Positions 17,069 through 64,000 of a stretch of 64,000 bases of DNA are shown one piece after another. The translations under genes were made by a program, and so were the position numbers. The DNA is taken from positions 21,300-85,299 of the forward strand of contig NW_021833045.1 of assembly GCF_006345805.1 (NCBI RefSeq), in the 5' to 3' direction. Every line of letters begins with the position of its first letter. Within the stretch, counting starts at the first letter, position 1. The notes below the pieces were generated by a model. That model saw only the letters and a program-made list of their open reading frames with translations, was not told where the DNA came from and did no database searches. This DNA is from Octopus sinensis. Lineage: Eukaryota.

Positions 17069-17116
<48 letters not shown>

Positions 17117-17134
17117 TATAATAATAATAATAAT

Positions 17135-17747
17135 ACGTACGCAATGTACGCCACTAGCCCAGAAGGAATATAAGAAACCCCACAATATAGCCAGGCTTGT
17201 CCTTGGACACTTTGCAACAAGTATGGATTTAACAGTGCAAAAAATTGGTACGACCAGCAACCTGATGGCATCGTCGAAAATAGAAGTACAAAGATCCTAT
17301 GGTATTTTATGATTCAGTGCGACTATGAGATAGAGAAAAGTAAGCCGGACAGAGTCTTGAGAAAGAAAACAAACTATGCTGGATCATAGATATACTATGC
17401 CCAGCTGACAACAAGGTATACGATAAGGAAGAAAGAAAATTCGATAGCTATGACATGTTAGCTTGGGAGTTTAAGCAGTTGTGGTCGATGAAAAAGGTAT
17501 CAGTAGTACCAATAATTGTCGGAGCCCTGGGGACAGTGAGCAAAAATCTCGAGAAGTACGTGGAACATTTAGGGGCTGCAATAAGGTTGGAGCACTTATA
17601 GAAAACAGCACTGCTTGGAACCGCTCGGAAGGTGCTAAAAAATATAAGGTGTTACCTTAGTTCACTGATACTGAACAGCTGACACTGTAGTACATCTCTT
17701 GCGTTAGAAGCTGTGCAAAGGCAATAAATAATACTAATAATAATAAT
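17135..17747 (+). mobile_element. 5'-truncated R4/Dong-like non-LTR retrotransposon (restriction-like endonuclease region + 3'UTR)
   Basis: Frameshifted translation CTPLAQKEYKKPHNIARLV/WTLCNKYGFNSAKNWY...ILWYFMIQCDYEIEKSKPD.../LCWIIDILCPADNK...VVPIIVGALGTVSKNLEKY...KTALLGTARKVL. This matches the end of the CCHC motif plus a PD-(D/E)xK RLE; it ends in (AAT)n. Confidence 0.85.
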
Positions 17748-17875
17748 TTGCTCGACTAAAAGCGATGTTCCAGCATGGCCGCAGTCAAATGACTGAAACA
17801 AGTAAAAGAATAAAATAAAAAAAGAATAGTGATGTTAGTAGTGCTGATAGTGTAATAACAATAACAGTAATTAAC

Positions 17876-17990
17876 AAGAAGAAGAAGAAGAAGAAGAAGA
17901 AGAAGAAGAAGAAGAAGAAGAAGAAGAAGAAGAAGAAGAAGAAGAAGAAGAAGAAGAAGAAGAAGAAGAAGAAGAAGGAGGAGGAGGAGG
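17876..17990. repeat. (GAA)n microsatellite
   Basis: About 33 perfect GAA units followed by GGA. Confidence 0.95.
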
Positions 17991-19997
17991 TCAATAGAAA
18001 TAATAATAATGAGTATAGTGACGATGGTGATGGTGATAATGACAATAACAGTGAAATAATAGTAACGAAAATAAGGTTTTATAATAACAACAACACGAAT
18101 AACAATAGGTGATAAATGTTAATTAGTCGATAACAGTAGAACGGTGAGTATCCTATTAAATATTATTGAATCAAGGCAAATAGCATTTTGGCTATTAATT
18201 ACCAAGTGATCAATAACGATTGAATATTTGTTAATAAATGTCAACCGATCGATAGTGAAATTAGCTCACAATTAAACATCAAATTCACAGTTTAACAAGC
18301 AGACGTTAGTTAGCAGGGATTAGAAGCCTCTGTTTGCAATTAAACTTTTCTTCATATTCTTCATGTTGTTACATTACGTTCAATGTTTTTTGTTGATGTC
18401 TTCTTCAGAAAACTAAACCGAAGTACTTACCAATGAAGCAGCTCAACTGTCATGAAATTGGTTTGAGATTTTGGCACAAACAGAAGGGGACTAGTCGATT
18501 ACATGAATCTTAATTTTTTATCGACCCCCGAAAGGATGAAAGGCAAAGGCGACCTCGACAGAATTTGAGCACAAGACGTAAAGACGGACAAAATGCTAGC
18601 ATTTTGTCCGGCGTACAAACGGTTCGGCCAGCTCGCCTCCCTCAGCTCTTATGAAACTGATCGACCTAAAATCGGGTTGTCAGATGAATTGTTTTTTTGT
18701 TTTTTTTCTTTTGGGCGTGGAGGGTCATTTATTTGAATCTGTTTGATGTTATTTTAATTAACATGAAATGTATTTTTAACATAGTATTTAATGGTTTTTA
18801 CTGGGATTTTTGTAGTTCTATCTTTCTCTCTATAACTCTTGTTTATCTTTTTTACTATCTGAATACATTTTATCGCTTTCCATGCATATAATGATGGAGC
18901 GCCAAGTAGAAACCCACTACAAACACCAGTCAAACTACGATCCAACCAAGGAACATCTATGTGATTGCATGATTTCTAGAAATAGCAATGAAATTCATCA
19001 AAAGATCATACTCTAGAGTAGAGGTCGGCAAAGGGATAAATTTTTTCCTCGGAAGGTGGGGGTCTATGGGAATGTCCAAGGGGATGATAAGCATCTGAAA
19101 AGATTTTGAGCATTATGGAGCTGAATTTATAAATAAGATGTGTCTCAATTTTTATTGTTCTTTGTAAGTTATATTGTTCGTTGTGTATTTTCATTAAATT
19201 TCTTCAAATATTTCTTATTAAAAAGCAGTGATGACACAAAATATCGAAGAAATTCTTGTTTTAAAATCGAGAAATTTTTTTATTAATTATACATTTAATC
19301 TTATTTTAGAAATTTACACGATAGGGGTCTGTAAGTTTTCGATGATTTTACGAGCTGTCAATGTTTTTGATTGTTTCAGACATAAACATGAACATTTGAG
19401 ATAATGCAGTCTGAGAGACGTTTCGACTTGGAAAATAGCAAATGAGAGTCACAGTTTGAAGGTCGTTGTTCATTGGTCTATTTGATCAAGCCTGAGCTGA
19501 TGTTAAACAACTATAAGAACATCATCAGCCAACGAAATAACTTTCATGTCAGGGCTTGCTATCCTCGTAAGAAGCAGGACTCATTTGATAATGTCTGAAG
19601 AATGAGAAAAAAGGGAAAAATCTTCCAGAATGTTCTTGATCACAGATTAGCTCGATCTAGAATGGCTCAGTGTTAAACAATAGCAACAACTAGAAAAAGA
19701 ACATTTATGTAAGGACAATATAAGATAATAAAATCTATATCCCTGTAAAAAAAAAAGGGGGGTTTGTCGCGGTTGAAAATGTTTTTAAGTTGATCATAGG
19801 TTTGATTAAATAAGTACTGAGCTGAGACTGAACAACAATATAGACCTAAGAAAATAATATTATCCCTCCCCACTTTCTCCCTAAATGTTAAAATTAACGT
19901 AGGCTAGAAATTTCTTATATATAAGCATTTCCCAGTAAACCATAATTGCGGAAAAAATTTTTATAGACGCCTGATTAAAAGATTAAAATTCATACAG

Positions 19998-20184
19998 CTG
20001 CTACCCCAATATGACGAACATTATCACTCGTAAACGTCGCCAAGAGTCCACTCCTAGTTTGAACTCTCGGAACCCTGAATTTTGCCCAATTGACCAGGCG
20101 TATATGATAGACTCTGTCGTTTATGAGACAGAAGATGAAGTGTCTGAAAAAAAACTACATCCGTTTATGCGAAGGCAATTTTAG
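19998..20184 (+). CDS. Possible terminal coding exon (CYPNMTNIITRKRRQESTPSLNSRNPEFCPIDQAYMIDSVVYETEDEVSEKKLHPFMRRQF*)
   Basis: Acceptor catacag|; about 61 open codons in unique sequence; no family recognised. Confidence 0.25.
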
Positions 20185-20539
20185 ATGACGTCATGCAAAC
20201 ACCAGTTTTCTTTCCGGCACATCAACAAAAGAAAAGCCACTAAATTGGCTAGCGACGTATGGGGTTTGAGGACCAACTGAATACCACATTCAATCAAGTG
20301 GCAAATCGTGGATATATCCTTACTATATGTAAACAGATCTAATAAATGCAACTGATGCGCAGCTGAAAGATCGCACATTCTCACACACGCGCACCTTCTC
20401 TTGGTATCACCAACACTATTATCTCCCTTTCTTTCAAACTTTTTTCCAATCATTCGCCATGCTAGACCGCTGAAATCTACAAGTTTTTTTTGTATTCTCT
20501 CTCTCTCTCTCTCTCTCTCTCTATTTATTTATTTATTTT

Positions 20540-20670
20540 CACTAATTCCTTTCTGTTGAAGAGCGGAGGCACGAAATGTAAAAGATTTTCACTTACATGA
20601 GCGTCAAACTAATACACTTCTTTGTTGCTCATACACCTGTCTTCGTCTTTGGTTTTCCTATAAATTTCAA
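20540..20670 (+). mobile_element. Probable Penelope-like terminal-repeat fragment
   Basis: ttgaagagcggaggcacgaaatg resembles the hammerhead-bearing ends of PLE pLTRs. This is recognised by recollection, not by alignment. Confidence 0.35.
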
Positions 20671-20700
20671 ATATCTACATACATATACACACACACACAC

Positions 20701-20752
<52 letters not shown>

Positions 20753-21004
20753 CCTTACATGTAATGTTTTTCTAATTTTGTCAAATATTTCCCCGATGAA
20801 ATTCATACCCATAAATATGAATATTTTATATATTCATTATTGGGTATGAATCGAAACAATTCGTAGGATTAATATTTGTATTCCTATTCATATTATATTA
20901 TATTACATTATATTATATTTATTGTAATATAATATTATGCTAATAAATTATATTTAAGATATTTCTATCGTAAATCCACATTTTCTTAACTTTTGTGTGT
21001 GTGA

Positions 21005-21042
<38 letters not shown>

Positions 21043-21699
21043 CTTGTCTCCATGGCACTCTCTTCTCTCACCTATCCTCTATCCACTACACTTTATTTTT
21101 TCTTCTATATTGTCTCCCTCTCTCTCTTCGACTCTCTTTCACACTCTTCCGCCTTCCTTCCCTCTTATTTCCAGCAAAATCATTTTTTTTTATAACGTTT
21201 ATTATCCTGTGTTCAGCTGCATTCGCTTTACTATTCCCGTTCATACATTCTCTCTTCACACTACATGTATGTGTTTGTGTGTGTGGCGCACATGCGCACA
21301 TATATACTTTCGCACTTCTGTCGGCTCTTAACTCTTTATTCTATACTCTTCTCATCTTCACAAAGCTCACGCAAGCCACACTTTCACACATATCCACACA
21401 AAGTGCACAGAGAGACGGGGAGATCAAACCTGCACGCAAACACGTCACTAGCTTAAAAGAAATTTCATTCAACCTCCATACATTCAAACATATTCAAATG
21501 CATGTGTGAATACATAAGGGAATTTCTTTGTGCAAGTGCATACCTGTATACGTATGTGTATGTCTGTATATTTTTATATATGTATCCGAGTGCATGTACA
21601 AATGTTTGCTACACAATCAAGAGATCCTGAGTTCGATACTACCGCATGGCTTTTTGGGAAATTGTGATTTTTTTTTTGTTATTGCTTTTATTTTTACGA

Positions 21700-22140
21700 A
21701 AGCACAGGCATAATTGTGTGGTATAGAAGCTCGCTTTGCGAAGCACATGGTTTCAGATTCAGTCCCACTGCGTAGCACCTTAGGTAATTGTTCTGGGTCG
21801 ACCAATGCCATGTGAGCGAACCTGGTAGACAAAAGGTCTGTGTGGAAGCCCGTCCTATACATGTATGTACATGTGTGTGAGTGTGTGTGCATGTGTGTGT
21901 CTGTGTGTTTGCATATGTGTTTGCATGTGTGTGTGTGTTTGTTTGTCGTCCCACTGCTTCATATCCGATTTTGATTTGTTCAAGTTTCCGTGACGTAGCA
22001 ATTCCATACAAGAGACCCATAAAATAAATACCAGAATTTAAAATGCAACATAAGTCCCTGGGTGGGGTGATTAGTAAAATTAAATCTTGCAAGGTGGTGT
22101 CCCGGCATGACCGCAGTCAAGGACTGAATCAAACGAACGA
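21700..22140 (+). mobile_element. Degenerate SINE-B
   Basis: cacatggtttcagattcagtcccactgcgtagcacct...gtcccggcatgaccgcagtcaaggactgaa. Confidence 0.75.
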
Positions 22141-22481: not shown

Positions 22482-22534
<53 letters not shown>

Positions 22535-22567
22535 TTAAATACATATATACATATACACACACACACA

Positions 22568-23014: not shown

Positions 23015-23050
<36 letters not shown>

Positions 23051-26970: not shown

Positions 26971-27001
<31 letters not shown>

Positions 27002-27844: not shown

Positions 27845-28450
27845 TATTTTCTACTCTAGGCACAAGGCACGAAATTTTGGGGGAGGGGGCCAGTCGATTA
27901 CATCGACCTCAATACGCAACTGGTACTTAATTCATCGACCCCGAAAGGATGAAAGGCAAAGTTGACCTCGGCGCAATTTTGAACTCAGGACGTAAAGGCA
28001 AGCGAAATACTGCCAAGCATTTCGTCCGGCGTGCTAACGTTTCTTATTTCTTTATTGCCCACAAGGGGCTAAACATAGAAGGGACAAACAAGGACAGACA
28101 AACGGATTAAGTCGATTACATCGACCCCAGTGTGTAACTGGTACTTAATTTATCGACCCCGAAATAATGAAAGGCAAAGTCGACCACGGCGGAATTTGAA
28201 CTCACAACGTAACGGCAGACGAAATGCCTATTTCTTTACTGCCCACAAGGGGCTACACACAGAGAGGACAAACAAGGACAGACAAACGGATTAAGTCGAT
28301 TACATCGACCCCAGTTCGTAACTGGTGCTTATTTAATCGACCCCGAAAGGATGAAAGGCAAAGTCGACCTCGGCGGAATTTGAACTCACACCGTAACGAC
28401 AGACGAAATACCGCTAAGCATTTCGCTCGGCGTGCTAACGTTTCTGCCAT
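27845..28450 (-). mobile_element. SINE-A cluster (A2 copy plus A1 dimer)
   Basis: Three bodies containing cgaccccgaaaggatgaaaggcaaagt; junction gacgaaatgcctatttctttac at ~28220. Confidence 0.9.
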
Positions 28451-28759
28451 CATGCAGCCTTCATTACTAATAATATTGACGTACTGCAATTAATAATTAC
28501 ATTATTTACTAAGATTATTGCCTATATGAGCGCCTCTGTGGTTGAATCACAATCACAGTTGCTATTACTTATGCCTCTTGACATCTATCACTGTTATGAC
28601 AAAGGTTGTTATTAATACTGACTGCCATTAATCATGCTAATATTACTAATTATATCACTCTATACTGCTGCTGGTATGACCGCTTCTATAACTGAACTAT
28701 TACTATTGTTAATACTATATTTCAGACTGCTGGTATCACGATTGTTGACATAACACTGA

Positions 28760-32512: not shown

Positions 32513-32557
<45 letters not shown>

Positions 32558-32565
32558 TAGATAGA

Positions 32566-32617
<52 letters not shown>

Positions 32618-32629
32618 TAGATTGATTGA

Positions 32630-32677
<48 letters not shown>

Positions 32678-32780
32678 TAGACAGCAGAGATAAATAGATA
32701 GATAGATAGATAGATAGATGACAGACAGACGACAAACAGACAGACAGACAGACAGATAGATAGATAGATGATAGATAGAT

Positions 32781-32831
<51 letters not shown>

Positions 32832-32862
32832 GATAGATAGATAGATAGATCTATAGATAGAT
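32510..32862. repeat. (GATA)n/(GACA)n tract
   Basis: Directly visible. Confidence 0.95.
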
Positions 32863-32863
32863 G

Positions 32864-33217
32864 ATTCTTTTTATTGGCCACACAGGGCTGCACAGATGGG
32901 GAAAATTACAAGGTAGAGCTTTTCTTTTGGGGGATGAAAAAAAACAAAAAAAACAAGAGAAACAAAAAAAAGAAAAGAAAAAGGAAAAAAGAAGAAAAAG
33001 GAGGAAAAAAGGGAAAGAGAAAAAAAACGATCAATAGGGATCGTGTATCACAGTGTCATGATGTACGGTGTAAAGGGGGGAAGCAGATGAGGTTTATCCG
33101 TGGGAAGAAAAGCCTACGAAAAAGACCACAGTAACCTCGGTCAATATTGTTATATGTTACCACATTTGTTTGCAAGTGGGTAATCCTCTGTTTTCAATTT
33201 CTGGGTTCATAGGACTA
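32864..33217 (-). mobile_element. Tx1/L1-like LINE, 3'UTR-only truncated copy
   Basis: Aligns by eye with 52868-53277 (ttatt(g/a)gccacacagggctgcac; aattacaaggtagagcttttcttttg; gaaaagaccac(a/g)gtaacctcggtcaat; tttctgggttcataggacta). Confidence 0.85.
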
Positions 33218-33234
33218 GATAGACAGACAGACAG

Positions 33235-34585
33235 ATGGCTATGTACCTATCCGTTTGTATGTCTCTCTGTTTACTTTCATATCTATATGCCTACACACAT
33301 GTGCAGATACATATACACATACACACACACACATACATACACACACACATCTATCTACATAACAGCCCACTAACTATTCTACCTGTATATAAATATAAAC
33401 TGTGGGGTGTGATTATCTACTACGTAAATTTCCAATTTAGTACTGGGGATGTTTCATTTATGAGGACGTACTCCTGTATTTGTCTGAGTGTTGGATCCTT
33501 TGGGTGCTTGGATAAAATGCAGATATCAAGTTGACCCAGGTTGCCTCCATGTTGGAGAGCATCCAGTAAGTAGCTAACTCCATCTGCCAAAGTATAGCTT
33601 CGAAATATGTTCTTCACAACATGAAAATAAACATACTTAAAGCAGACTTAGGATAATGAACAACGTGTCCCCACTATGCAAACCCTATGAAACGAAGAAA
33701 CATGTACAGAACTTCATGCACCGCATGCAATTCTCTGGATGTGATCAGAAAGATAAGGTTCGAGTATACAGGGGTGCTAGAAAGAAGTTAGATAACATTA
33801 TATGTAATGATACCAGTGGTACCTACCTTAGATATAGAAGCAAAGGCTGGAATAGAATACAAAGAGCTTGTGACAAAGCAAACACAGTGAACACGTGGTA
33901 TAAAACTGACAAATATCAAGGAGTGATGTTTGTAGAGGCCATAACCCATGGAGAACTAACCCGTAGATTTAGGAAAGCTCTGAAGGAGACCAAAACTCAA
34001 CATTAAGATTGTTGAAAAGCCAGGGAACTCCATCAGATCACAACTATGTAGGACGTACCCCTTTGAGACCATTTCACCAATGATAACTGCATGGTATGTA
34101 GGATTATCCCTGGTATTAACTGTAGAACTAGAAATGTAGTCTACAGCATAACATGCATAGAAGTTTCTTGTAAAGACATGAACATGATGTACATAGGGAA
34201 GATATCTAGGAGCATTGCGGAAAGACTAAATGAACATTTGAAACAATATGACGACTAAAAAACAGTCTTTTATACTCTACTAACATGCCAAGGACCAACA
34301 TTGAGGCAACCTGGGTCAACTTGACATCCGCATTTTATCCAAGCACCCAAAGGACCAAGCACTCAGACAAATAGAGGAGTACGTCCTCATAAATGAAACA
34401 TCCCCAGTACTAAATAGAAAATATACGTAGTAGTTAATCACACACCTATACCCACAGTTTATATTTATATACAGGTAGAATAGTTAGTGGGCTTTTATGT
34501 AGATAGATGTGTGTGTGTGTATGCACATGTATGTAGGCATATGGATATGAAATTAAACAGATAGACATACAGACTGATACATACA
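33235..34585 (+). mobile_element. Penelope-like element, 5'-truncated, with inverted terminal repeats
   Basis: Disrupted ORF ~33641-34430 gives the RT C-terminus/linker (WYKTDKYQGVMFVEA...IKIVEKPGNSIRSQL), a Cys-rich linker and GIY-YIG (CRTRNVVYSITC...MYIGKISRSIAERLNEH...LRQIEEYVLINETSPVLNRK). 33235-33555 is the reverse complement of 34295-34585. Confidence 0.85.
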
Positions 34586-40884: not shown

Positions 40885-40918
40885 TGCATATGTTGTTGTT
40901 ATTATTATTATTTTATTA

Positions 40919-40959
<41 letters not shown>

Positions 40960-40962
40960 TTG

Positions 40963-41021
<59 letters not shown>

Positions 41022-41192
41022 GTTATTATTATTATTATTGTTATTATTATTATTATTATTATTGTTATTATTATTGTTGTTGTTATTATTATTATTATTA
41101 TTGTTATTATTATTATTATTATTATTGTTATTATTATTATTATTGTTATTATTATTATTATTATTATCATCATCATCATTATTATTATTATT
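40885..41192. repeat. (TTA)n tract
   Basis: About 300 bp of TTA/TTG. Confidence 0.95.
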
Positions 41193-41366
41193 ATTTATTG
41201 CCTTTGCACAGCTTCTAACGTTGGAGCTGTGCTACGGTCTCAGCTGTTCACTACTAGTGAACTAAGGTAACACCTCTTATTTTTCGAGCACCTTCTGGAG
41301 TATTCGAGCGGTTCCAAGAAGTGCTGTTTTCTGCAAGTGTTCCACCCTTATTGCAGCCCCTATTTT
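41193..41366 (-). mobile_element. R4/Dong-like LINE 3' end (same family as 17135-17747)
   Basis: Reverse complement encodes IGAAIRVEHLQKTALLGTARILQKVLEK* followed by the 3'UTR ggtgttaccttagttcact...gttagaagctgtgcaaaggcaataaat, shared with 17640-17730. Confidence 0.88.
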
Positions 41367-41415
41367 TATTATTATTATTATTATTATGATTTATTACTTT
41401 ATTATTATTATTATT

Positions 41416-41600
41416 GACGCCGTACAGTATCCAATATTGTGAGGTTGTTGACTGAAGATATCTACCGGGGTTTTGCACTGTTTGTCAAGTCACAACGAGG
41501 ACCTCAGACAGACAGTACTTTACCCAATATGCGTACAATTCCACGTATTGCCAGTTTTTTCCAATACATCTAAGTTGTAGAATATCTCTAAGGTTTTCAG
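41416..41600 (-). mobile_element. Second RLE-type LINE 3' end (different family)
   Basis: Frameshifted reverse complement reads approximately ...LEKT/AIRGIVRILGKVLSV*, the same KTA.LGT.RILRKVL C-terminal motif; distinct 3'UTR ending in (AAT)n. Confidence 0.6.
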
Positions 41601-41604
41601 ATTT

Positions 41605-42010
41605 CAAGGCGGCGAGCTAGCAGAAACGTTAGCACGCCGAGGGAAATGCTTAGCTGTATTTCGTCTATCGTTACGTTCCGAGTTCAAATTCCGCCGAAGG
41701 CGACTTTGCCTCTCATCCTTTCAGGGTCGATAAATTAAGTACCAGTTACGCACTGGGGTCGATGTAATCGACTTAATCCATTTGTCTGTCCTTGTTTGTC
41801 CCCTCTATGTTTAACCCCTTGTGGTCAATAAAGAAATAGGCTTTTCGTCTGCTGTTACGTTCTGAGTTCAAAATCCGCCGAAGTCGACTTTGCCTCTCAT
41901 CCTTTCTGGGTCGATAAATTAAGTACTAATAAAACATTGGGGTTGATTCAATCGACTAGTCTCTTCCCCCAAAATTTCAGGTCTTGTGCCTATAGTAGAA
42001 ACGATTATTA
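41605..42010 (+). mobile_element. SINE-A dimer (A1 unit + A2-tailed unit)
   Basis: aaggcggcgagctagcagaaacgttagcacg head; junction aaagaaataggcttttcgtctg at ~41830. Confidence 0.9.
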
Positions 42011-51479: not shown

Positions 51480-52331
51480 CATATATACATACATAGATTT
51501 GTATGTGTATATATGTGGGTAGGGGGTACAGATATATATGTTTTACTAAGTATATACGAAAATACTTGAATGTTGCGTGTAATACATATATATATATATA
51601 TATATATATGCATCCATCCATACGTACACACATACAGATATATATACACACCAACTAACACATACATATACACATAAATACACGCATACACACTCACATA
51701 CACACATATACATATATACATAGAGACAGAGAGAGAGTTACAGAGAATAAGAAAGACAAAGAGAGAGAGAGAGAGAGGAATGGTGAACTATGATAAGAGG
51801 ATAATTAAAGAGAAGTAAAACAGAGGTGTAAGTAGGAAGAGATGATTGAGTCTGAAGGTGTTAGCCATTCTTATTGATGTTTTTGGACAACTATCGATCT
51901 CTAATAGATGCACTTATACCCAGGAGTCATAATCGGTTTTTTTCGCTTCTCTTTGTAAACACTTACCAATTCCCCAGTTCAAATCCATTCCGAGTTCCAT
52001 CAAAAGACTATAAGACTATAGTATGAGGAAAAAGGTGGGGGTGATGTGTGTAGGGGAAGGGGGTGTTTGAAGGCCGAGAGAATACACAACGCGCGTGCAA
52101 GTACGTACTTATGGTGTAGAGTGAAATATATAAACAGATGTAGGGAAAATATGGATGTGTAGATATGTGTGTACGCATGCGCGTCCAACGTTTATACATT
52201 CATGTTTCTAAATATATATATAGATAGATAGATTGGTTGGTAGATAGATAGATAGCGAGAGAGAGAGACAAAACGAGAAGAAGAAAGACAGAGATAGAGA
52301 GAAATAGTGAGATGGGGAGAGAATGATAGAT

Positions 52332-52364
<33 letters not shown>

Positions 52365-52719
52365 TACACACATACATACATACATACATACATACATACA
52401 TACATACTACATACATACATACATACATACATACATAGCGAGTGAGAGAGAAAACGAGGAGAAAGACAAAGAGAGAAAAATAGTGAGATGGGGAGAGAAA
52501 GGTAGATAAATAGAGAGAGAGAGAAAGATAGACAGACAGACAGGCAGAGAGATTGAGAGCCAGACAGACAGACAGAGACAGAGAGAGATGGGCAAACAGA
52601 TAGATAAATAGAGACAGGCAAACAGACAGACAGATAGAGAGAAAAACAGAGAAACAAACAGATAGACAGGCAGACAGACGCACAGACAGACAGAAAGACG
52701 GACAGACAGACTGAGAGGC

Positions 52720-52784
<65 letters not shown>

Positions 52785-52801
52785 TATAGATAGATAGATG
52801 A

Positions 52802-52855
<54 letters not shown>

Positions 52856-52867
52856 GGATAGATAGAT

Positions 52868-54153
52868 ATGTTTCTTTATTAGCCACACAGGGCTGCACAC
52901 AGATAGAACAAATTACAAGGTAGAGCTTTTCTTTTGAAGTTTTGAAAAAAAAAAAAAAAAAAAAAAAAAAGAAGGGGGAGTTTCGATCAAAAGGGATCGT
53001 AAAAGGAGAGAAAGAGGACAAAAAAAAGGGGGGTTAAAAAAAAAAAAAAAAAAAAAAGGGGAGAGGAAAAAAAATTGATCAATAGGGATCGTTATCACAG
53101 AATGTCAATATGAAGTGTAAAGGGGAGGACAGGTGAGGTTACCCGTGGAAAGAAAAGCCTACGGAAAAGACCACGGTAACCTCGGTCAATGAAGTCACAT
53201 TTTATATTCTTTCTTTTTTTTTTTTTTTTTTGCAAATAAGCAACTCTCTGTTTTCGATTTCTGGGTTCATAGGACTATGCTCAAGGTGGCTTCGTCATTC
53301 ATACGTGCCATTCTTGCTACATTCACCCATCTTTTTTTAAAACATTCGCTAGACAAAACTTGCCTCTCTACTCTCACTTTCCTTTTCAAGTGGTACTTGA
53401 AGAAGTTGATGAGAGATTGACCAGAGAGGAAAGTGTTTGTCCTCCAATCCTTTCAGACGCGTCCACCAGATACATTTTTTCGCCATAGCCACAAGGATGA
53501 TGAAAATAGCTCTTCCTTCCCGTTTGAAGGAAGAGGCGTGACAATATTGACGATAGACTCAGCTGATAAACCGACTCGTCCACACGTGACAGCAGTTGTT
53601 CGACATAAGCCCACAGGTCGGAAATTGTTGGACACTGAACGAGTGCGTGCAGAACGGTTTCGTCGCTCTGACCGCATCTCGGGCAGGTCGGCCCCGTGTT
53701 TCTCGAGCCGTGTCTGTAGAGCTTATCCCGAACGGGTAGCGCTTCTCGGTAGCACTGCCAGGCCAGGGATCTCTGGAAGTTGTCCATGGGCCCTGGCCCG
53801 AAAGTCGTCCCGAACAGGCGGGTCAGGTACTCCTCGTCGACGTCCAGGTTCGCCCCGAGCTCGTCGTCGTCCTCTCCCCTCCACTAAACCCCTATAGAAG
53901 CTTTGGTTGTGTTGAAGTCACTTAAGGTCGACCCAGGACGCAGAGTGCTTGAGAGCAACGCGACACTCGCGGTGCCATTCGCCCTTCCTCGGCCTCTTTT
54001 TGATCCACGACTGCAGTTCGGTCATGGAGACGAGCTGCGGGAAAGCGTGCCTCACAAACGGCGACCACACCTGTTCACCGTCGTCTACATAGAGCCAGAG
54101 ATGTCGCAGTCTCAGCGCGTGTCTGCGCATCATCAACCACGGCATGCCCAGAT
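52868..54153 (-). mobile_element. Tx1/L1-like LINE, 5'-truncated (~1.3 kb), flanked by (GATA)n
   Basis: Frameshifted ORF2 C-terminus (stop at 53267-53269) with LAWQCYREALPVRDKLYRHG...PTCPRCGQSDETVLHALVQC (CCHC knuckle of L1/Tx1 ORF2). A 3'UTR with AATAAA runs directly into (ATCT)n. Confidence 0.88.
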
Positions 54154-54155
54154 GA

Positions 54156-54222
<67 letters not shown>

Positions 54223-54761: not shown

Positions 54762-54810
<49 letters not shown>

Positions 54811-57390: not shown

Positions 57391-58067
57391 CTATCTACCT
57401 GTCTATCGCTATTTATCTGTCCAACTATTTCTCCCTTAAGTGCATGTGTGCGCGTGTCTGCGTGTGAGTGTGCTTGTAACATTGTGCGCGTGTGTGCGTG
57501 TGTGCGTGTGTGTTTCTCTGGTTTTAGTTTTCGGATCTAAAGGGTGCGGCATAAAATCCTCCTATGTTTCGCACACCGATTAGTGGGACGCAAGACTTGT
57601 TAGGCAGCTGTTATTACAATCTCCACGTAGCTAATATGTTCCCGTTTCTTTTCAGTGACCATCATGGTTTGGATTGGAGCATATACTGTGCGTTTGCAAG
57701 GGAAACTCTTGCCAACCTCTAAATGTGGGAGGTTTTGGACACACTCTGTATAGTTTTGCGATATAAAGTGAAAAATCAAAAGAAATTTTGATTAATTCTT
57801 TGAAAATAAGGAAACAGCAAAATCTATACCACCCTCCAATAACAACAGACCAGCTTTCCATAGAGCTAGATGGTCAAGTGCCATAATACACTTAAGTACT
57901 CTCCATTCAATCGTTTCTCTTCGTTTCGTCACTCATACTGATCAATCACCAGCACCTCCGACAATCATTCTCTACACAAAACCTATACTCCTTCTTTTCT
58001 TCCTTAAACTTCATTTGACTTGAAATACCTCCTCCCAGCTCATCTTAAGTATTTATTGGGGAAGGAA

Positions 58068-58166
<99 letters not shown>

Positions 58167-58299
58167 GCTGCGTCCATCAGTTTGGAATTATTCAAGAGAA
58201 GTAGTAGCAAAGTAGATCCCATGAGTCTAGGATCGGAGGTTCTGCAAAGCCAACATGCAAATGCAGAACCTTTTTCTCGAAGGAAGCAATAATTATTTC

Positions 58300-58520
58300 A
58301 AATTTTGGAACAAGGTGAGCAATTTCAAGGAGACGAGGGTTAATCTATTACATCGACGCTCCACCCCAGAATTCAACAAGTTTTATTTTATCGACCCTGA
58401 AACGGATGAAAGGCAAAGTTGACCTCGGTGACACTTGAATCAGAATGTAAAGTGTCTGAACAAATTTTGTCCGACGCGCGAAAGGATGAAAGGCAAAGTC
58501 AACCTCGGCAGGTCTAATAA
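58300..58520 (-). mobile_element. Degenerate SINE-A2
   Basis: ggatgaaaggcaaagt(t/c)(g/a)acctcgg occurs twice. Confidence 0.7.
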
Positions 58521-59689
58521 TGACGAGCCAACAGGTCTAATAATCCTTTCTACTTTAGGATCAACGCTTGGAATTTGGAATAAGCTAGCATCCATCACAC
58601 ACACACGTACACACATACACACACCCCAATCATGACCGTCCTCAGATAATCTACTTTTCGTAAAATACAACCGCGCCATCTTGCCCATTCTCCTTCCCCT
58701 TCAGCAATTCTCCCCCTCTCTCTGCTCGTGTTTTCTCTTTAGCCCACCCCTCTCATAATACCTCCTTCTCCCACTGCTCTCATACTCTCTCATTAAACCC
58801 CCCTCCTCTCTTTTAAATTCTTTCATCACTTTTTGTCGTTTGTCGTCTTAAATTCCATTCGCTTCCATCTCTTCCTCTTTCTTCCAAATTCACGTCTATA
58901 TATCTCAGTGGTCGTCTCACTCCCCATTTCTCTCTCTCTCTTTCTCTCTCTTTCTCTGTCTCTCTCTGTCTCTCTCTGTATCCCTCTGTCTCTCTCTCTC
59001 TCTCTCTCATTTTCAATCTCATATACATACATACATACATATACATACACATATATTTACATACATACATGTATTCATGTATTCATGCGTGTATGGATAT
59101 ATATACTTATACATATATATATACGTATATACATATACATATATATATATATAGACACACACTTATACATACATATATATGCATATATATATACATATAC
59201 ATATATATATATATACGTACATACATATACATATATATATTGACAGACATATATACATACATATATATACATATACATGCATATATATATATGTGTGTAT
59301 ATATATAAATTTGAAATAATAATGGTGAAAAATTGAATATTAATTTGATTAATATCAATTCAAAACCAGTCGCCTAGCATATAAAATCTGAATATTCAGA
59401 AAAATTATATTACATACATATAAGGGGGATGACCATTGTCCACGTAGTGGTCATCCCTCTTATATGTATGCATATATATATATAAATATATATGTGTGTG
59501 TGTGTAAGCATATATTTCTTTCTTTACTTATTTATTTATTAGCAATGCCACATTACCGAAAACTGATTCTTGGAATTCCTCACTATAAGAGTCAGTAAAA
59601 GACCCCTCCAGGTAGTCTTTTAGCTACAGTTAGGCTTCACCTTTGAAACACCAGATTCTGCAGAAGACATGGCGAGAGGGAGATGTCAA

Positions 59690-60593
59690 TTGTCTCTCTC
59701 AACCACTCGCACTCCCCCTCCTCGCTCTCTCTCTTTCTCTTTCCTCTCTCTCACTCTCCTTCTCCCTCTCTCTGCTTATATATATTTACATTTTTTCTGT
59801 TACTGCCACCACTCTGGCTCCCTCCCCATCTCTCCCTTTGCCACTTCCTCTCTCTCCCTCTTTATCACTCTACCTACTTCCACCTTTCTTTCTCTTTGTC
59901 CCCTCGTTTTTCTCCCTTTCTTTCTCCCCAGTTTCTGTATTCCTCTCCCTCTCCTCCTTTCTACTTCCCTTTCAAATTTAACCATGGTCTTTCCTCATCT
60001 CAAGTATATTCCTCTTCTTCCTCAATTTCTTTTTTTACACCATCTCTTATTCTCACCTCCCACCGTCCCTCATTTCTTGTTTCGACTTTTCTCTCACTCA
60101 GATATTTTCTGTCTATTTCTCTATCTTTCTTTGTCTTACTTTCTCTCCCACTCCCTCTATTTCTCTCTCTTACTCTCTCTCACTTGCTCTCTCTCTCTCT
60201 CTCTCTCTCATCTAATTATCACTCTGTCTCTCCCTCCCTCTTTTTCTCTCTCATAAACACAATCACTCTTTCATCTTCATGCATTTCTTTCTCCCTCTCT
60301 CTTTCTCATTCCCATACTCTATTACTTCCTTTTTCTACCTCATTTGTTGCTCTCTTTCTCTCTCCTCTCTTTTTCTCTCATAAACACAATGACTCCTTCA
60401 TCTTCACACATTTTTCTTCCACCCTCTCTCTCTCTCTCATTTCCATACGCTATTACTTCTTTTCTCTCCCTCTTTCTTTCTCTTCCGTTCCCTCTTTCCC
60501 TTTTGTCCTTCATATTTGTAAGCCACTCCTTCCCCACCCTCATTCTTCTCTTTTCAACTCTGTACAGATGCTTCGTTTTCTGCATCACTTTCA

Positions 60594-60642
<49 letters not shown>

Positions 60643-60709
60643 TCTCTTCTTTGTCTCTCTCTCTCTCTCTCTTCCTCTCCAGCTCACTCATATACAAACC
60701 TTCTCTCGT

Positions 60710-60752
<43 letters not shown>

Positions 60753-60900
60753 ATTCATGTATCTATCTAGCTAGCTAGCTAGCTATCTGTCTGTCTCTCT
60801 GTCTCTCTACCTATCTATCCATCTATCAATCTACCTACCTAATTATTCGTCTGTCTATCTTTCTACCTATCTATCAATCCCCCCCTCTATCTTCCTCCAT
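59690..60900 (+). repeat. ~1.2-kb polypyrimidine (CT-rich) low-complexity tract
   Basis: Strong C/T strand bias with (CT)n runs. Confidence 0.9.
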
Positions 60901-61379
60901 TCTATCAAACAGTGTCAATTGTTCTTTTCTCATCTCACACTTATATCTCTCTTTCTCTCTTTCTCTACACTTGTTCTTTCTCACTTTCTACTCTCTCTCT
61001 CTCTCTCTCTCACACACACGCTCACACACTCACACACACTCCCTACTACTCTCCCTTTCCACGCTGTGTGTGTGTGTGCGACTGTGTGTGTATCTTCCCG
61101 TTCTTCATTCATTCTCTTTCTCACTTTCTACTCTCTCTCACTCTCTCACACAAACACACACACACTATCTCACACACACACACACACACGTATACACTCA
61201 CACACACATTCTATTCTCACACACAGTCACTACTACACTCCCTTTCCACGCTCTCTCTTTCTCTCTCTCTCTCTATGTGTGTGTGTATGTGTGTATGTGC
61301 GTGTATGTGGCTCTGTGTATGTCTGTGTGTGTGTGTGTGTGTGTATCTTCCCGTCCCTCATTCATTCTCTTTCTCACTT

Positions 61380-61440
<61 letters not shown>

Positions 61441-62249
61441 TCACACTCACACACACATTCTATTCTCACACACCATCATTACTATACACCTTTTCCACAC
61501 TCTCTCTCCCTTCCTTTTCCTCTCCCCCTCACCCCCTCTCTCTCTCTGTATCTCTTCCCGTTCCTCATTCATTCGCTTTCTCACCTTCTCTATTTCTCCC
61601 TCCCTACTCTAAACTACATCGTATTTCGCCTTATATATCTCTTTGACTCATAATTAAACACTCTTTGAATCTTAATTAGTTTTCAGTCATAATTAATAAC
61701 GACATTTCTCAAGAAACCATAGTTATGCTTTTATGCATGAGCCTATTTCTGATTTTATTATTGACAGCCTCCGAAAGGCAGAAATGTTTGAGAATGGCTT
61801 AACAGCGTCACCTGGTGGTATTCGTGTGTGTCACTATGCCATCCCTGTTTTATTTCCGCAGCAAGATCGATTTTATCTTCCTCGTCTGATAAAATAAAGT
61901 AGGGCTATGGGACGATGTGGCACAGGCGTTTCGGCGCTACTTATTTGACGCCGCTAATTCGACGCTGACTTCAGCCGGTTTAATGTTTCTTTCGGTATTG
62001 TTTTATGGTTATTGCTAGTTTGACAAGTCGATAGTATGTCTAGCATGTCTCCAATTTTGTATGCTTAGTATGTCTCTAATTAATTTTGTACATTTGTATG
62101 GTTATTACTAGTCTGACAAGCCGATAGACGGCACTCGAACTCCCAATCAACTTGATCTTCACAAGATATATATATATATATATATATATATATCGTTCTA
62201 GCCTTAGTATAGAGTCACATAAGTAAAATAATAACATCATCTTAAGGGT

Positions 62250-62420
62250 TTAGTCGAATAAATTGACCCCTGTGCTAATTTTGTAAAGTGTGGTACTTAT
62301 TATGTCACTTCCTTTGAACGAACCGCTAAGTTACACTGACGTAAATAAACCACCACGAGTTGTCAAGCGGTGCGGTGAACAAATACAAACACTAACACAC
62401 ATAAACACAGATACATACAG
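62250..62420 (-). mobile_element. SINE-B 3' fragment
   Basis: gaaccgctaagttac...gtaaataaaccacc...gttgtcaagcg (reverse complement of the SINE-B body). Confidence 0.7.
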
Positions 62421-62589
62421 ACACACAAATGCACACATACACCAAATACACACATGCACACACATACATATATACGATGTATATATATATATGCAGTGTA
62501 TATATATAATCACAGTATATATATATATATATACACACACGTGGACACACACACACATACATACATACATACATACATACATACATACA

Positions 62590-62623
<34 letters not shown>

Positions 62624-62648
62624 CATAAATACATGCATGCATACATAC

Positions 62649-62989
62649 TCATTCGAAGACTACAGATCCAATCCATCACTGGAACTGTAAAAATCTGTAA
62701 AACTTTCCAGAGGTTTATCATTTAAATATAATGAACATGTCTAGATATGCAACCATATGCATGAGAATACGTACATAAAGCAAGGCATACAAATTTGTAC
62801 ATATACATACATACATATATACATACATACATACATACATACATACATACATACATACATACATACATACATACATACAAAAATACCTTGTTGTTGATGT
62901 TGAAATTCCAATAAAGGAGCCTTGGATCTAGGTTAGAAACCGGTTCTTTCTCTATTAGCAAGAAATCTTGAAATAAAATTGAACAATGA
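62649..62989 (+). mobile_element. RLE-type LINE 3' end (C-terminus + 3'UTR), copy 1, in (CATA)n
   Basis: RRLQIQSITGTVKICKTFQRFII* is homologous to the C-terminus of the next copy; the 3'UTR ends gttagaaaccgg...gaacaatga|catacata. Confidence 0.7.
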
Positions 62990-62996
62990 CATACAT

Positions 62997-63582
62997 ATGC
63001 GACAACGTCGACGTAAAAAAATGTACACAAATGCCATTCGGAAAAAAGACTATCCTGCCATAAATGCAGAGCATCGCCCTGTAATTGAATACATACACAG
63101 ACGTCAACACAAGAAATGCTTGTGGAACATTCCCATGAAAATACATGTCAAGTGTAAGCATAACAGGCCGGATATTGCTGTTTGGGACTCAGACAAGAAA
63201 AGAGTATGTGCCGTAATAGGGGTCTTGATGTAAGTATCTTTGAAAATCAAAAAGAAAGAGGATTACTATGGACAACTGCTTCGAAACTTCCAGCTTCTAT
63301 ATCCAGAATGTATATTCGCATTTATATTAATAATAATTGGTACACAATTGTTTTATGTGACAATCTAGATAAGCTAGAGTTTTCAGAAAAAGAAATCAAC
63401 CAACTTGCGACATTACAAATATAATTTGTAAGTGGAACAGGAAAACTGTGCAAGACTTTTCCTAAGTTTAAAATGTAAAATCATTTTTGTTATCCTCACA
63501 CCAGCGATGGACCATTGTATCTTTGTTAGAAACCAGCTCCTTGCTCAGAGGAAGAATTCAAATAATTAAAAGCAGAAGAGAA
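62997..63582 (+). mobile_element. RLE-type LINE 3' fragment, copy 2 (clade uncertain: NeSL/HERO/CRE-like)
   Basis: Frameshifted ...LWNIPMKIHVKCKHNRPDIAVWDSDKK.../KEDYYGQLLRNFQLLYPECIFAFILIIIGT.../LQI*FVSGTGKLCKTF..KM* (PD-(D/E)xK-type); the 3'UTR gttagaaaccagc...gagaa runs into CATA/CA repeats. Confidence 0.75.
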
Positions 63583-63624
63583 CATACACACACACATACA
63601 CACATACATACATACAGACATACA

Positions 63625-63658
<34 letters not shown>

Positions 63659-64000
63659 CATACATACATACATACATACATGCGCATATATCTGTTTACA
63701 AGACAGTGCGTACGTTTCTTAGTGTTTCATTGAGATTATAAGAACGCTAAGGAACGAAACTACTTATGTAAATGAGGGCCCAAATCCGAACTCTGTTGGT
63801 CGGTTTAATTCCCAATAATTGTATGCATAATCACATTTTAATTATAGGAATATTACTGGAAATTAAATGTAGATTGATTAGTTTTCGAATTTCATTTATC
63901 TATTTAGAAGATAAGATTTAATATAACTCTTATTGTATGTACGAGTGATTAAACCTTAAATTATCAATATTTATGTTAATAATAGTGCATCAGATGTGCG

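What the first reader, a model, noticed from the sequence alone, without database searches (positions are those of the whole stretch)
17069..63700. Three unrelated LINE families each embedded in their own microsatellite: possible partitioning of microsatellite targets
Seen: the Tx1/L1-like copies (32864-33217, 52868-54153) sit in (GATA/GACA)n; the R4/Dong-like RLE copies (17135-17747, 41193-41366, 41416-41600) sit in (TAA)n; the other RLE family (62649-62989, 62997-63582) sits in (CATA)n. The same repeat is present at the 5' truncation junction as well as the 3' end, except at 41600, which abuts a SINE. Known: Dong targets (TAA)n, and Tx1-clade Kibi/Koshi target (TC)n/(TTC)n. Inference: in this microsatellite-rich genome several sequence-specific retrotransposons divide up different simple repeats as harmless landing sites, and may in turn seed or extend them. 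I do not recall (GATA)n- or (CATA)n-specific families being described.
Basis: partly seen in the sequence, partly recalled or inferred. Interest (0 to 1): 0.75.

Follow-up and report, generated by a model that had tools for sequence, protein, structure and literature searches.

The report
Microsatellite-targeting LINE retrotransposons in octopus
Dead copies of three jumping-gene (LINE) lineages in an octopus-type genome each sit inside the simple repeat that matches their own tail, the known signature of microsatellite-targeting retrotransposons; two of the repeat preferences may be new for their lineages, but the phenomenon is well established.

Summary
The window is octopod DNA, rich in simple repeats and SINEs. 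The core observation holds. Six 5'-truncated LINE fragments carry the same microsatellite at their 3' tail and at their 5' truncation junction.

- **Family A:** two copies of an L1/Tx1-group element (zf-RVT C-terminus) in (GATA/GACA)n.
- **Family B:** two copies of a Dong/R4-like element with a restriction-like endonuclease (RLE) in (TAA)n.
- **Family C:** two to three head-to-tail copies of a second, distantly related RLE element in one (CATA)n array.

Five independent 5' flanks give a combined p of 1e-6 against window background. SINE flanks in the same window show no such pattern.

Related copies fetched from other octopod assemblies repeat the pattern for B ((TAA)n within 60 bp upstream at 8 of 9 junctions) and for C (2 of 2 informative copies). 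No further copy of A could be obtained.

- 41416-41600 is not demonstrably a LINE.
- B and C are homologous, not unrelated.
- (ACAY)n, which includes (CATA)n, is already a described LINE target (Waldo).
- Several microsatellite specialists sharing one genome is already known in mosquito and fish.

Verdict: target-specific insertion, a known kind. Possibly new are a (GATA)n specificity in the L1/Tx1 group and a (CATA)n specificity in an RLE lineage.

The parts
32513..32863 (.). (GATA/GACA)n array on the 3'-tail side of copy A1
32864..33217 (-). A1: 354-bp 3'-UTR-only copy of the L1/Tx1-group family. Its sense-strand 3' end is ...CCCTGTGTGGCCAATAAAAAGAATC followed by (ATCT)n.
33218..33238 (.). 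gatagacagacagacagat remnant at the 5' truncation junction of A1
   Evidence: own-motif fraction 0.51, P 0.0125
52220..52867 (.). Composite (GACA/GAGA/GATA)n array, pure (GATA)n next to the element, on the 3'-tail side of A2
52868..54153 (-). A2: 1286-bp 5'-truncated copy holding the RT thumb, the zf-RVT C-terminal domain (frameshifted) and a ~410-nt 3' UTR with a hairpin at about 53130-53185
   Evidence: (PF13966, E 2.8e-8)
54154..54222 (.). (ATAG)17 directly at the 5' truncation junction of A2. No second element copy lies beyond it.
   Evidence: fraction 0.95, P 0.0028
17068..17135 (.). (AAT)22 directly at the 5' truncation junction of B1
   Evidence: fraction 1.00, P 0.0079
17136..17747 (+). 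B1: Dong/R4-like copy truncated in the CCHC region, with a degraded RLE domain (KILWYFMIQCDYEIEKSKPD...IIDI..P.D...GALG), a 3' UTR and an (AAT)7 tail (17724-17747)
40899..41195 (.). (TTA)n array of about 300 bp on the 3'-tail side of B2
41196..41366 (-). B2: 171-bp 3'-terminal copy of the same family as B1 (84% identity)
41367..41415 (.). (TTA)n at the 5' truncation junction of B2
   Evidence: fraction 0.79, P 0.03
41416..41600 (.). Unclassified 185 bp between (TTA)n and a SINE. Claimed as a third Dong-like copy, but no similarity or ORF supports that.
62555..62648 (.). (CATA)n, perfect to 62619 then imperfect, upstream of the first family-C fragment
   Evidence: fraction 0.57, P 0.009
62649..62802 (+). 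C1a: last ~25 codons of the family-C ORF (…LQIQSITGTVKICKTFQRFII*) plus about 75 bp of unmatched sequence
   Evidence: tblastn of P0024 residues 149-175, 63% identity
62803..62879 (.). Internal (CATA)19 between C1a and C1b
62880..62996 (+). C1b: 110-bp 3'-terminal fragment of family C (67% identical to the last 90 bp of C2) plus a 7-8 bp catacat(a) tail
62997..63582 (+). C2: 586-bp copy of the second RLE family (…KKCLWNIPMKIHVKCKHNRPDIAVWD…), frameshifted, with a ~110-nt 3' UTR. It is 73% identical to an Octopus vulgaris copy.
63583..63681 (.). (CACA/CATA)n 3' tail of C2

Best explanation
The window is octopod genomic DNA. It holds inactive, 5'-truncated copies of three non-LTR retrotransposon lineages:
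- **A**: an APE-type L1/Tx1-group lineage whose RNA ends in (UAUC)n.
- **B**: a Dong/R4-like lineage with a restriction-like endonuclease (RLE), whose RNA ends in (UAA)n.
- **C**: a second, distantly related RLE lineage whose RNA ends in (CAUA)n.

Each integrated by target-primed reverse transcription into an existing array of the microsatellite that matches its own tail. The array is therefore split and appears at both the 3' end and the 5' truncation junction.

**Shown:** element identities, truncation points, the same repeat on both sides, recurrence of the pattern in other octopod genomes for B and C, and constant orientation of the element relative to the repeat strand.

**Inferred:** the element's endonuclease and DNA-binding parts nick inside the repeat, and/or the repeat-tailed RNA anneals to the nicked repeat to prime cDNA synthesis. 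Which of these two sets the specificity is not resolved here. Landing in simple repeats avoids genes, and successive insertions into the same array build head-to-tail nests.
For: **Identity**
- A2 carries zf-RVT. Its relatives are from Argonauta and Octopus. The near-complete Argonauta relative has an ORF1 with a CCHC knuckle and an ORF2 with Exo_endo_phos + RVT_1 + zf-RVT. Its best solved-structure match is human L1 ORF2p, E 5e-22.
- The near-full B-like copy L004:3824-7603 has RVT_1, a CCHC motif and an RLE. Its best solved-structure matches are R2 proteins, E 4e-11, with the K-PD...D...K region aligned.
- The C RLE domain is colinear with B. Its relatives are O. vulgaris and O. bimaculoides proteins.

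**Both-sided repeats in the window**
- Read directly.
- Own-motif flank P values are 0.003-0.03 per junction, and cross-motif fractions are low.
- Combined p = 1.1e-6.
- The SINE control shows no such pattern.

**Outside the window, family B**
- L004 has six same-orientation copies with different truncation points (query positions 907, 985, 929, 645, 1 and 715). Five are preceded by (AAT)n ending 0-13 bp before the detected start of homology, or ~300 bp before it for the near-full copy, which has a 5' UTR. The sixth has (AAT)n ~35-50 bp upstream. Each is followed by (AAT)n.
- L008 has (AAT)28, then a copy truncated in RT, then (ATA)7.
- L007 has a copy at 14313-15062 between (TAA)n arrays.

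**Outside the window, family C**
- L009 has a copy between (ATAC)n 1992-2283 and (CATA)56 3465-3690.
- L010 (O. vulgaris) has a copy directly preceded by (CATA)21.

**Literature**
- Dong targets (TAA)n, including in a snail. Waldo targets (ACAY)n, Kibi (TC)n and Koshi (TTC)n (PMC3812793).
- Crocodilian Tx1 families prefer (TTCC)n/(TTTC)n (PMC4494074).
- Dong-R4, L1-Tx1 and Hero families are catalogued in O. vulgaris (PMC13282606).
Against: - Family A rests on two copies only. No further (GATA)n-associated copy could be obtained.
- A's nearest relatives in O. sinensis, in Argonauta and in the Logan contig L012 have no tail or an (ATT)n tail, and have non-repeat 5' flanks.
- Exceptions exist for B. 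L007:10113-10356 has a (TAA)n tail but a non-repeat 5' flank. The two L001 copies are joined to other element sequence without (TAA)n.
- One C-like fragment (L011) has no repeat on either side, but it is truncated at both ends.
- All window C fragments share one locus.
- No empty (pre-insertion) site was seen for any copy.
- No endonuclease assay exists, so the recognition step is inferred.
- Clade placement (Tx1 versus L1; R4/Dong versus HERO or NeSL) was not tested by phylogeny.
Confidence: 0.72

Rival explanations
1. Tails only. The microsatellites are made by the elements themselves through a repeat-ended template and reverse-transcriptase slippage ('microsatellite seeding', as described for RTE and CR1 LINEs). 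On this view the repeat at a 5' junction is just the tail of an earlier neighbouring copy or a later expansion, with no recognition of pre-existing repeats.
For: - C2's 5' flank is literally the 7-8 bp tail of the preceding fragment.
- In L004 every 5' repeat is also the tail of the upstream copy.
- RTE LINEs in octopus and Lepidoptera carry microsatellite tails (PMC9115989; PMC2887409, listed).
- The tail motif changed to (AT)n in the O. vulgaris C copy, which shows the tails are labile.
Against: - A2, A1, B1, L008 and L010 have the repeat at the 5' junction with no upstream copy of the family beyond it.
- Even in nests, repeated insertion exactly at a previous copy's tail is itself target preference.
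- Many arrays of the same motifs in the window carry no element, so the repeats exist independently of the elements.
Confidence: 0.13
2. Chance or passive accumulation. In a genome where about 11% of the sequence is perfect simple repeat, decayed LINE fragments merely survive or pile up in repeat-rich, low-recombination regions. This was proposed for Drosophila Waldo-A/B near CA repeats. No insertion preference is involved.
For: - The window is very repeat-rich: 11% in perfect runs, and 14% of positions lie within 10 bp of some SSR.
- The passive explanation is on record for Waldo-A/B (PMC3812793).
Against: - Each family's flank matches its own motif, not just any motif.
- Per-junction P is 0.003-0.03 and the combined p is 1.1e-6.
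- SINE flanks in the same window do not show the pattern.
- The pattern recurs in four other assemblies.
- The repeat starts at the exact truncation point.
Confidence: 0.04
3. A is not a specialist. The L1/Tx1-group family is an ordinary dispersed LINE that happens to carry a (TATC)n tail, and the two window copies lie in (GATA)n by coincidence or by occasional tail-to-target annealing.
For: - Only two copies exist.
- Close relatives are not microsatellite-associated.
- They share their 3' end with a dispersed SINE.
- No (GATA)n-specific LINE turned up in the literature searches.
Against: - The only two (GATA)n arrays longer than 100 bp in the window both hold a copy. The copies have different truncation points and are 71% identical, so they are independent events.
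- Flank P is 0.0125 and 0.0028.
- The Tx1 clade is known for microsatellite specialists.
Confidence: 0.25

Closest known systems
Dong (R4 clade): Bombyx mori Dong, DongAg, DongBg of the snail Biomphalaria
   Same: Family B and its octopod relatives have a single RT ORF followed by a CCHC motif and a restriction-like endonuclease. They carry a (TAA)n tail and have (TAA)n on both sides of truncated copies, forming head-to-tail nests (PMC3812793). 'Dong-R4' families are already annotated in octopus genomes (PMC13282606, PMC9115989, PMC10294476).
   Different: No difference in kind was seen. RT-phylogeny membership was not tested. A minority of copies lack the 5' repeat.
Tx1-clade microsatellite specialists: Kibi (TC)n, Koshi (TTC)n, and crocodilian Tx1 families in (TTCC)n/(TTTC)n
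   Same: Family A belongs to the APE + RT + zinc-binding C-terminus L1/Tx1 group. It has a repeat tail, and the same repeat sits at its 5' truncation junctions.
   Different: The repeat is (GATA/GACA)n rather than a polypurine/polypyrimidine motif. The host is a cephalopod. Only two copies were seen. Tx1-versus-L1 placement was not tested.
Waldo (R1 clade): WaldoAg1/2 and WaldoFs1 in (ACAY)n
   Same: It shares the target motif class with family C: (ACAT)n is (CATA)n.
   Different: Waldo encodes an APE endonuclease and lives in insects. Family C encodes a restriction-like endonuclease colinear with the Dong-like one, so the shared target is convergent.
Other RLE microsatellite specialists: some HERO families (leech, Repbase Reports) and Togen (TG)n in fish
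   Same: These are RLE-type LINEs targeting simple repeats (PMC4640811). 'Hero' families are annotated in octopus.
   Different: Their reported motifs differ. Whether family C belongs to HERO, R4/Dong or NeSL is unresolved.
LINEs with microsatellite 3' tails but dispersed insertion: RTE and CR1 ('microsatellite seeding')
   Same: They also end in a simple-repeat 3' tail.
   Different: Their 5' junctions are ordinary sequence. Here the 5' junctions carry the family's own repeat.

Membership tests
Dong / R4-clade (TAA)n-specific LINE (family B) | RT followed by a CCHC motif and a C-terminal restriction-like endonuclease, with no APE | tested here: met
   L004:4120-7474 and L008:8759-10378 have RVT_1, C-x2-C...H...C, and K/RPD...D...K aligned to the R2 RLE. 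The window B1 fragment keeps the RLE in degraded form.
Dong / R4-clade (TAA)n-specific LINE (family B) | (TAA)n tail, and (TAA)n also flanking the 5' end of truncated copies | tested here: met
   Window: 2 of 2 copies. L004: 6 of 6 copies (one with the repeat ~35-50 bp upstream of the protein match). L008: 1 of 1. L007: 1 of 2. L001: 0 of 2, in an atypical rearranged arrangement.
Dong / R4-clade (TAA)n-specific LINE (family B) | RT groups with Dong/R4 reference sequences in a phylogeny | not testable with these tools
   No Repbase or R4/Dong reference sequences were reachable. The only indirect support is published RepeatMasker-type 'Dong-R4' annotation in octopus.
Tx1-clade target-specific LINE (family A) | APE endonuclease + RT + C-terminal zinc-binding domain | tested here: met
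   A2 has zf-RVT. APE and RVT_1 were seen only in the 58%-identical Argonauta relative L003, because the window copies are 5'-truncated.
Tx1-clade target-specific LINE (family A) | RT groups with Tx1 rather than L1 proper | not tested
   No reference sequences were available. The best solved structure is human L1 ORF2p, which only places it in the L1 group. Octopus and mollusc surveys list only L1-Tx1/Tx1 for this group.
Tx1-clade target-specific LINE (family A) | A given repeat in more than 20% of flanks on both sides (criterion of PMC4494074) | tested here: inconclusive
   2 of 2 copies meet it, with P 0.0125 and 0.0028, but n = 2. No further copies were retrievable.
Waldo (R1 clade) (ACAY)n-specific LINE (considered for family C) | APE-type endonuclease, R1-clade RT | tested here: not met
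   Family C ends in a restriction-like endonuclease domain colinear with the Dong-like one.
Waldo (R1 clade) (ACAY)n-specific LINE (considered for family C) | Insertion into (ACAY)n | tested here: met
   (CATA)n lies at 5' junctions of window C1, L009 and L010, and at 3' tails of C2 and L009.
RLE-type microsatellite-specific LINE, clade undetermined (family C) | RLE domain with PD...(D/E)...K core downstream of the RT thumb and CCHC | tested here: met
   P0029 has the thumb (DRLYLKRK.G.R.L), the CCHC motif and NKPD. P0024 has an intact 178-aa C-terminus. They align with B-like sequences. The RT core of family C was not seen.
Tail-only LINEs (microsatellite seeding) | Repeat only at the 3' end, with 5' junctions like background | tested here: not met

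The most novel reading that the evidence does not exclude
Octopod genomes carry a guild of at least three microsatellite-specialist LINE lineages. It would include the first (GATA/GACA)n specialist in the L1/Tx1 group. It would also include an RLE lineage that converged on the (ACAY)n-type target used by the APE-type Waldo. Their repeated insertion and tail synthesis would measurably shape the unusual microsatellite landscape of cephalopod genomes.
Probability: 0.35. Interest if true: 0.5.

Novelty: new member of a known kind. Interest (0 to 1): 0.35.

Why it matters
Microsatellite-targeting LINEs are a textbook example of transposons finding safe landing sites, and their endonuclease and DNA-binding modules are of current interest as programmable integration tools.

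Several points would be useful additions to the catalogue:
- a cephalopod set with three different repeat targets;
- an APE-type element recognising (GATA)n;
- an RLE-type element recognising (CATA)n, which would be convergent with Waldo.

This set would give a compact comparative system for asking whether protein-DNA recognition or tail-RNA annealing sets the target.

It also matters for octopus genomics in practice. These families will be split, mis-joined or masked as simple repeats by standard annotation, and they confound microsatellite markers.

It does not change the concept, which dates from 1993-2004.

Tried and rejected
- **Word-indexed homologue search with the family-C fragment:** no hit. 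The exact 78-aa translation worked. Its top hit, P0020, is a 5126-aa repeat protein and was rejected as a false positive after reading it.
- **Two metagenome DNA scans for family-A 3' UTR motifs:** both returned 0 hits.
- **Short contigs carrying A-like proteins (L005, L006, L012):** they stop before the 3' end or belong to another subfamily.
- **(GATA)n arrays elsewhere:** none of 16 bp or more in 179 kb of other octopod loci.
- **Strict adjacency test:** requiring a perfect run of 12 bp or more within 10 bp missed the imperfect CATA flanks. It was replaced by a k-mer density test.
- **Control from other LINE families in the window:** tblastn with eleven LINE ORF translations (RT, APE and other domains) taken from the fetched loci, plus the near-full B protein, found only B1 and A2. 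SINE flanks were used as the control instead.
- **Idea that 41416-41600 is a Dong-like 3' UTR:** no similarity to any of ten Dong-like 3' ends. Left as 'cannot tell'.
- **Idea that the (ATT)n tracts at 352-1705 hide Dong fragments:** none seen.
- **Pfam on the B-like N-terminal region, which looked Myb-like by eye:** no significant domain, so no claim is made.

Full report
**What the window is.** GC content is about 36%. Perfect simple repeats cover 11% of the window (AAT 1.55%, ACAT 1.1%, AGAT 0.78%, ACAG 0.36%). It holds dozens of copies of a tRNA-like SINE. Protein fragments from the finding hit only cephalopod sequences: Argonauta hians, Octopus sinensis, O. vulgaris and O. bimaculoides. 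It is therefore octopod nuclear DNA. The exact species was not determined.

**Checking the observation.** Direct reading, self-BLAST and an array map confirm six LINE fragments embedded in family-specific microsatellites.
- A1 (32864-33217, - strand) and A2 (52868-54153, - strand) are 71% identical over the 3' UTR.
- Both A copies end, in sense, in ...CCCTGTGTGGC(C/T)AATAAA..., followed by (ATCT)n. On the + strand this is a long (GATA/GACA)n array to their left.
- Their different 5' truncation points are followed by gatagacagacagacagat (A1) and (ATAG)17 (A2).
- B1 (17136-17747, +) lies between (AAT)22 and its own (AAT)7 tail.
- B2 (41196-41366, -) is 84% identical to the B1 3' end and lies between about 300 bp and 49 bp of (TTA)n.
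- C2 (62997-63582, +) ends in (CACA/CATA)n.
- Upstream of C2, in the same array, lie C1a (an ORF-end fragment), an internal (CATA)19, and C1b, a 110-bp 3'-terminal fragment 67% identical to the end of C2.

**Corrections to the observation.**
- 41416-41600 shows no similarity to B1/B2 or to ten other Dong-like 3' ends, and has no ORF.
- 62649-62989 is composite.
- The C fragments form one locus, and C2's 5' flank is only the short tail of C1b.

**Is it more than chance?** I scored the 40 bp outside each 5' junction for the fraction of k-mers belonging to the family's motif. I then compared each score with all window positions.

| Junction | P against window background |
|---|---|
| A1 | 0.0125 |
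| A2 | 0.0028 |
| B1 | 0.0079 |
| B2 | 0.0296 |
| C1 | 0.0090 |
| C2 | 0.15 |
| 41600 junction | 0.89 |

- Cross-motif scores are low, so each family matches its own repeat rather than any repeat.
- Fisher combination of the five independent junctions gives p = 1.1e-6.
- As a control, 28 SINE fragments in the same window have 4 of 56 flanks at 0.5 or above for any motif, and none has such a repeat on both sides. For the LINE 5' flanks the figure is 5 of 6 (p = 1e-4).
- The only two (GATA)n arrays longer than 100 bp in the window both hold an A copy. Many (AAT)n and (CATA)n arrays hold nothing.

**What the elements are: family A.**
- A2 carries a zf-RVT domain (PF13966, E 2.8e-8).
- A 58%-identical, nearly complete relative in Argonauta (L003) has an ORF1 with a CCHC knuckle. 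Its ORF2 has Exo_endo_phos, RVT_1 and zf-RVT.
- The best solved-structure match of that ORF2 is human L1 ORF2p, E 5e-22.
- This places A in the L1/Tx1 group. Published octopus and mollusc surveys list only L1-Tx1/Tx1 for that group. Tx1 versus L1 was not tested here.
- A's relatives in O. sinensis and Argonauta end in CCCTTGTGGCTAATAAAGAAAT with no tail or an (ATT)n tail. They share that end with the octopod SINE. The (TATC)n tail is therefore specific to the window's lineage.

**What the elements are: family B.**
- Relatives include a near-full copy (L004:3824-7603) with RVT_1, a CCHC motif and a C-terminal domain.
- That domain aligns to the restriction-like endonuclease of R2 proteins, which are the best solved-structure hits overall at E 4e-11.

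**What the elements are: family C.**
- The word-indexed search found nothing.
- An exhaustive search with the exact 78-aa translation found O. vulgaris and O. bimaculoides proteins and an intact 178-aa C-terminus, P0024.
- Alignment shows C and B RLE domains are colinear: W...H.(K/R)PD...(D/E)...P.D...EK..Y..L...GALG...LQ...GT.K.
- tblastn E-values between them reach 6e-17.
- B and C are therefore distant relatives, not unrelated families.

**Does the both-sided pattern generalise? Family B: yes.**
- In L004, from another octopod assembly, six copies lie in the same orientation with six different truncation points. (AAT)n arrays separate them; the repeat ends 0-13 bp before the detected homology start for four, ~300 bp before it for the near-full copy, and ~35-50 bp before it for the sixth.
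- L008 has (AAT)28, then a copy truncated inside RT, then (ATA)7.
- L007 has one further copy between (TAA)n arrays, and one exception with a (TAA)n tail but an ordinary 5' flank.
- L001 holds two rearranged copies without (TAA)n.

**Family C: yes, on a small sample.**
- L009 has a copy bounded by (ATAC)n and (CATA)56.
- L010 (O. vulgaris) has a copy directly preceded by (CATA)21, with its tail now mostly (AT)n.
- L011 is an internal fragment without repeats and is uninformative.

**Family A: not testable.**
- Short contigs stopped before the 3' end or were another subfamily.
- Two DNA scans found nothing.
- The 179 kb of other loci contain no (GATA)n array.

**Mechanism.** The best explanation is target-site-specific retrotransposition. 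The element nicks inside an array of its cognate repeat and primes reverse transcription there. A repeat-ended RNA would ease this by pairing with the nicked strand. The result is an insertion that splits the array. Frequent 5' truncation puts the repeat directly against internal element sequence. Repeated hits on the same array, or on earlier tails, build head-to-tail nests such as L004 and window positions 62555-63681.
- Shown: anatomy, statistics and recurrence.
- Inferred: the recognition step. Endonuclease specificity is the accepted determinant for Tx1- and R1-clade specialists (PMC4494074, PMC8869645).
- Weakened rival: the 'tails only' reading. Copies such as A1, A2, B1, L008 and L010 have a repeat on the 5' side with no upstream element copy beyond it.
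- Excluded rival: chance or passive accumulation, by the statistics and the SINE control.
- Still open: a separate reservation for A, that it is not a specialist and two copies are a coincidence. I rate this at about 0.25.

**Comparison with what is known.** Microsatellite-targeting LINEs were described from 1993 onwards.

| Family | Target | Source |
|---|---|---|
| Dong (including a snail family) | (TAA)n | PMC3812793, |
| Waldo | (ACAY)n | PMC3812793, |
| Mino | (AC)n | PMC3812793, |
| Kibi | (TC)n | PMC3812793, |
| Koshi | (TTC)n | PMC3812793, |
| Crocodilian Tx1 families | (TTCC)n/(TTTC)n | PMC4494074, |
| Togen | (TG)n | PMC4640811, |
| Some HERO families | microsatellites | PMC4640811, |

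- Anopheles gambiae alone hosts Waldo, Mino and Dong, so several specialists with different repeats in one genome is not new.
- Octopus repeat surveys already list Dong-R4, L1-Tx1 and Hero families (PMC13282606, PMC9115989, PMC10294476). The O. vulgaris annotation never uses the word 'target', and the passages retrieved from the other two do not discuss insertion targets.
- Family B is therefore an ordinary Dong-type element.
- Family C shares its target class with Waldo but has the other type of endonuclease, so it is a convergent case in an RLE lineage of unresolved clade.
- I found no (GATA)n-specific LINE in four literature searches. Repbase Reports are not searchable here.

**Verdict.** This is a new set of members of a known kind. 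There are two possibly new target-lineage combinations, and one of them (A) rests on two copies. Interest is moderate to low, at 0.35.

Noticed in passing
window 41790-41842; L002 11030-11070; L003 186, 4831, 5182, 5339, 11172, 11841, 15212; L010 6656: The octopod SINE and the L1/Tx1-group LINE relatives share the same 3' end (CCCT TGTGG(C/T)(C/T)AATA(A/G)A(A/G)...). This suggests a SINE-LINE partnership. Family A's 3' end is a variant of it (CCCTGTGTGGC...). Some of these copies carry (ATT)n tails, the opposite strand of Dong's (TAA)n.
   Followed up: partly
window 53130-53185 (- strand); window 33075-33130 (- strand); L006 975-1025: A conserved 13-14 bp stem with a ~22-nt loop lies in the family-A 3' UTR (GAGGTTACCGTGG...CCACGGGTAACCTC). 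Folding z-scores are -1.9 and -2.8 in A2 and L006, and the stem is decayed in A1. It is a plausible RT recognition element. No covariation was available.
   Followed up: partly
window 41197-41280 (- strand): The 3' UTR of B2 folds into two hairpins with z = -3.4. Dong-like copies in L004 also have a hairpin just after the stop codon, despite unrelated sequence.
   Followed up: partly
window 6672-7319: A tandem array of 2.6 SINE units with a 253-bp period. SINE copies also lie head-to-tail at 3813-4212, 28045-28461 and 41601-41957.
   Followed up: no
L004 8490-9945: One Dong-like copy is interrupted by a ~1.45-kb insertion bounded by inverted termini (gcgtcgccctaaatggtc / gaccatttagggcgacgc), probably a non-autonomous DNA transposon. 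A 239-bp tandem duplication follows at 10352-10830.
   Followed up: no
L001 6480-7140 and 9830-10500: Two inverted Dong-like copies lack most of RT. Their 3' end runs straight into the 5' region of another copy (N-terminal ...TKWSKEMNKLVMKCF...) without any (TAA)n.
   Followed up: no
L007 398-1663, 2196-3677 with 5318-6508, 15500-16738: A further RLE LINE family, R2-like (CPFC..HTES.AHL..C...HRKPDI...), lies next to (TTA)n and (ATAC)n arrays. Its targets were not analysed.
   Followed up: no
L010 10630-10720: The O. vulgaris family-C copy has an (AT)n tract where the (CATA)n tail is expected, with only short acatacat remnants. This hints at motif turnover in tails.
   Followed up: no
window 58000-61300: A strongly C-over-G skewed stretch (GC skew -0.4 to -0.6) is made of (TC)n arrays and a 127-bp CT-rich tandem repeat. 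tblastn with the available LINE proteins detected no LINE fragment there.
   Followed up: partly
L011 9600-9900: The O. bimaculoides 'gene' LOC106878562 (P0029) is a family-C LINE fragment lying next to C2H2 zinc-finger-like coding sequence, so it is likely an annotation artefact.
   Followed up: no
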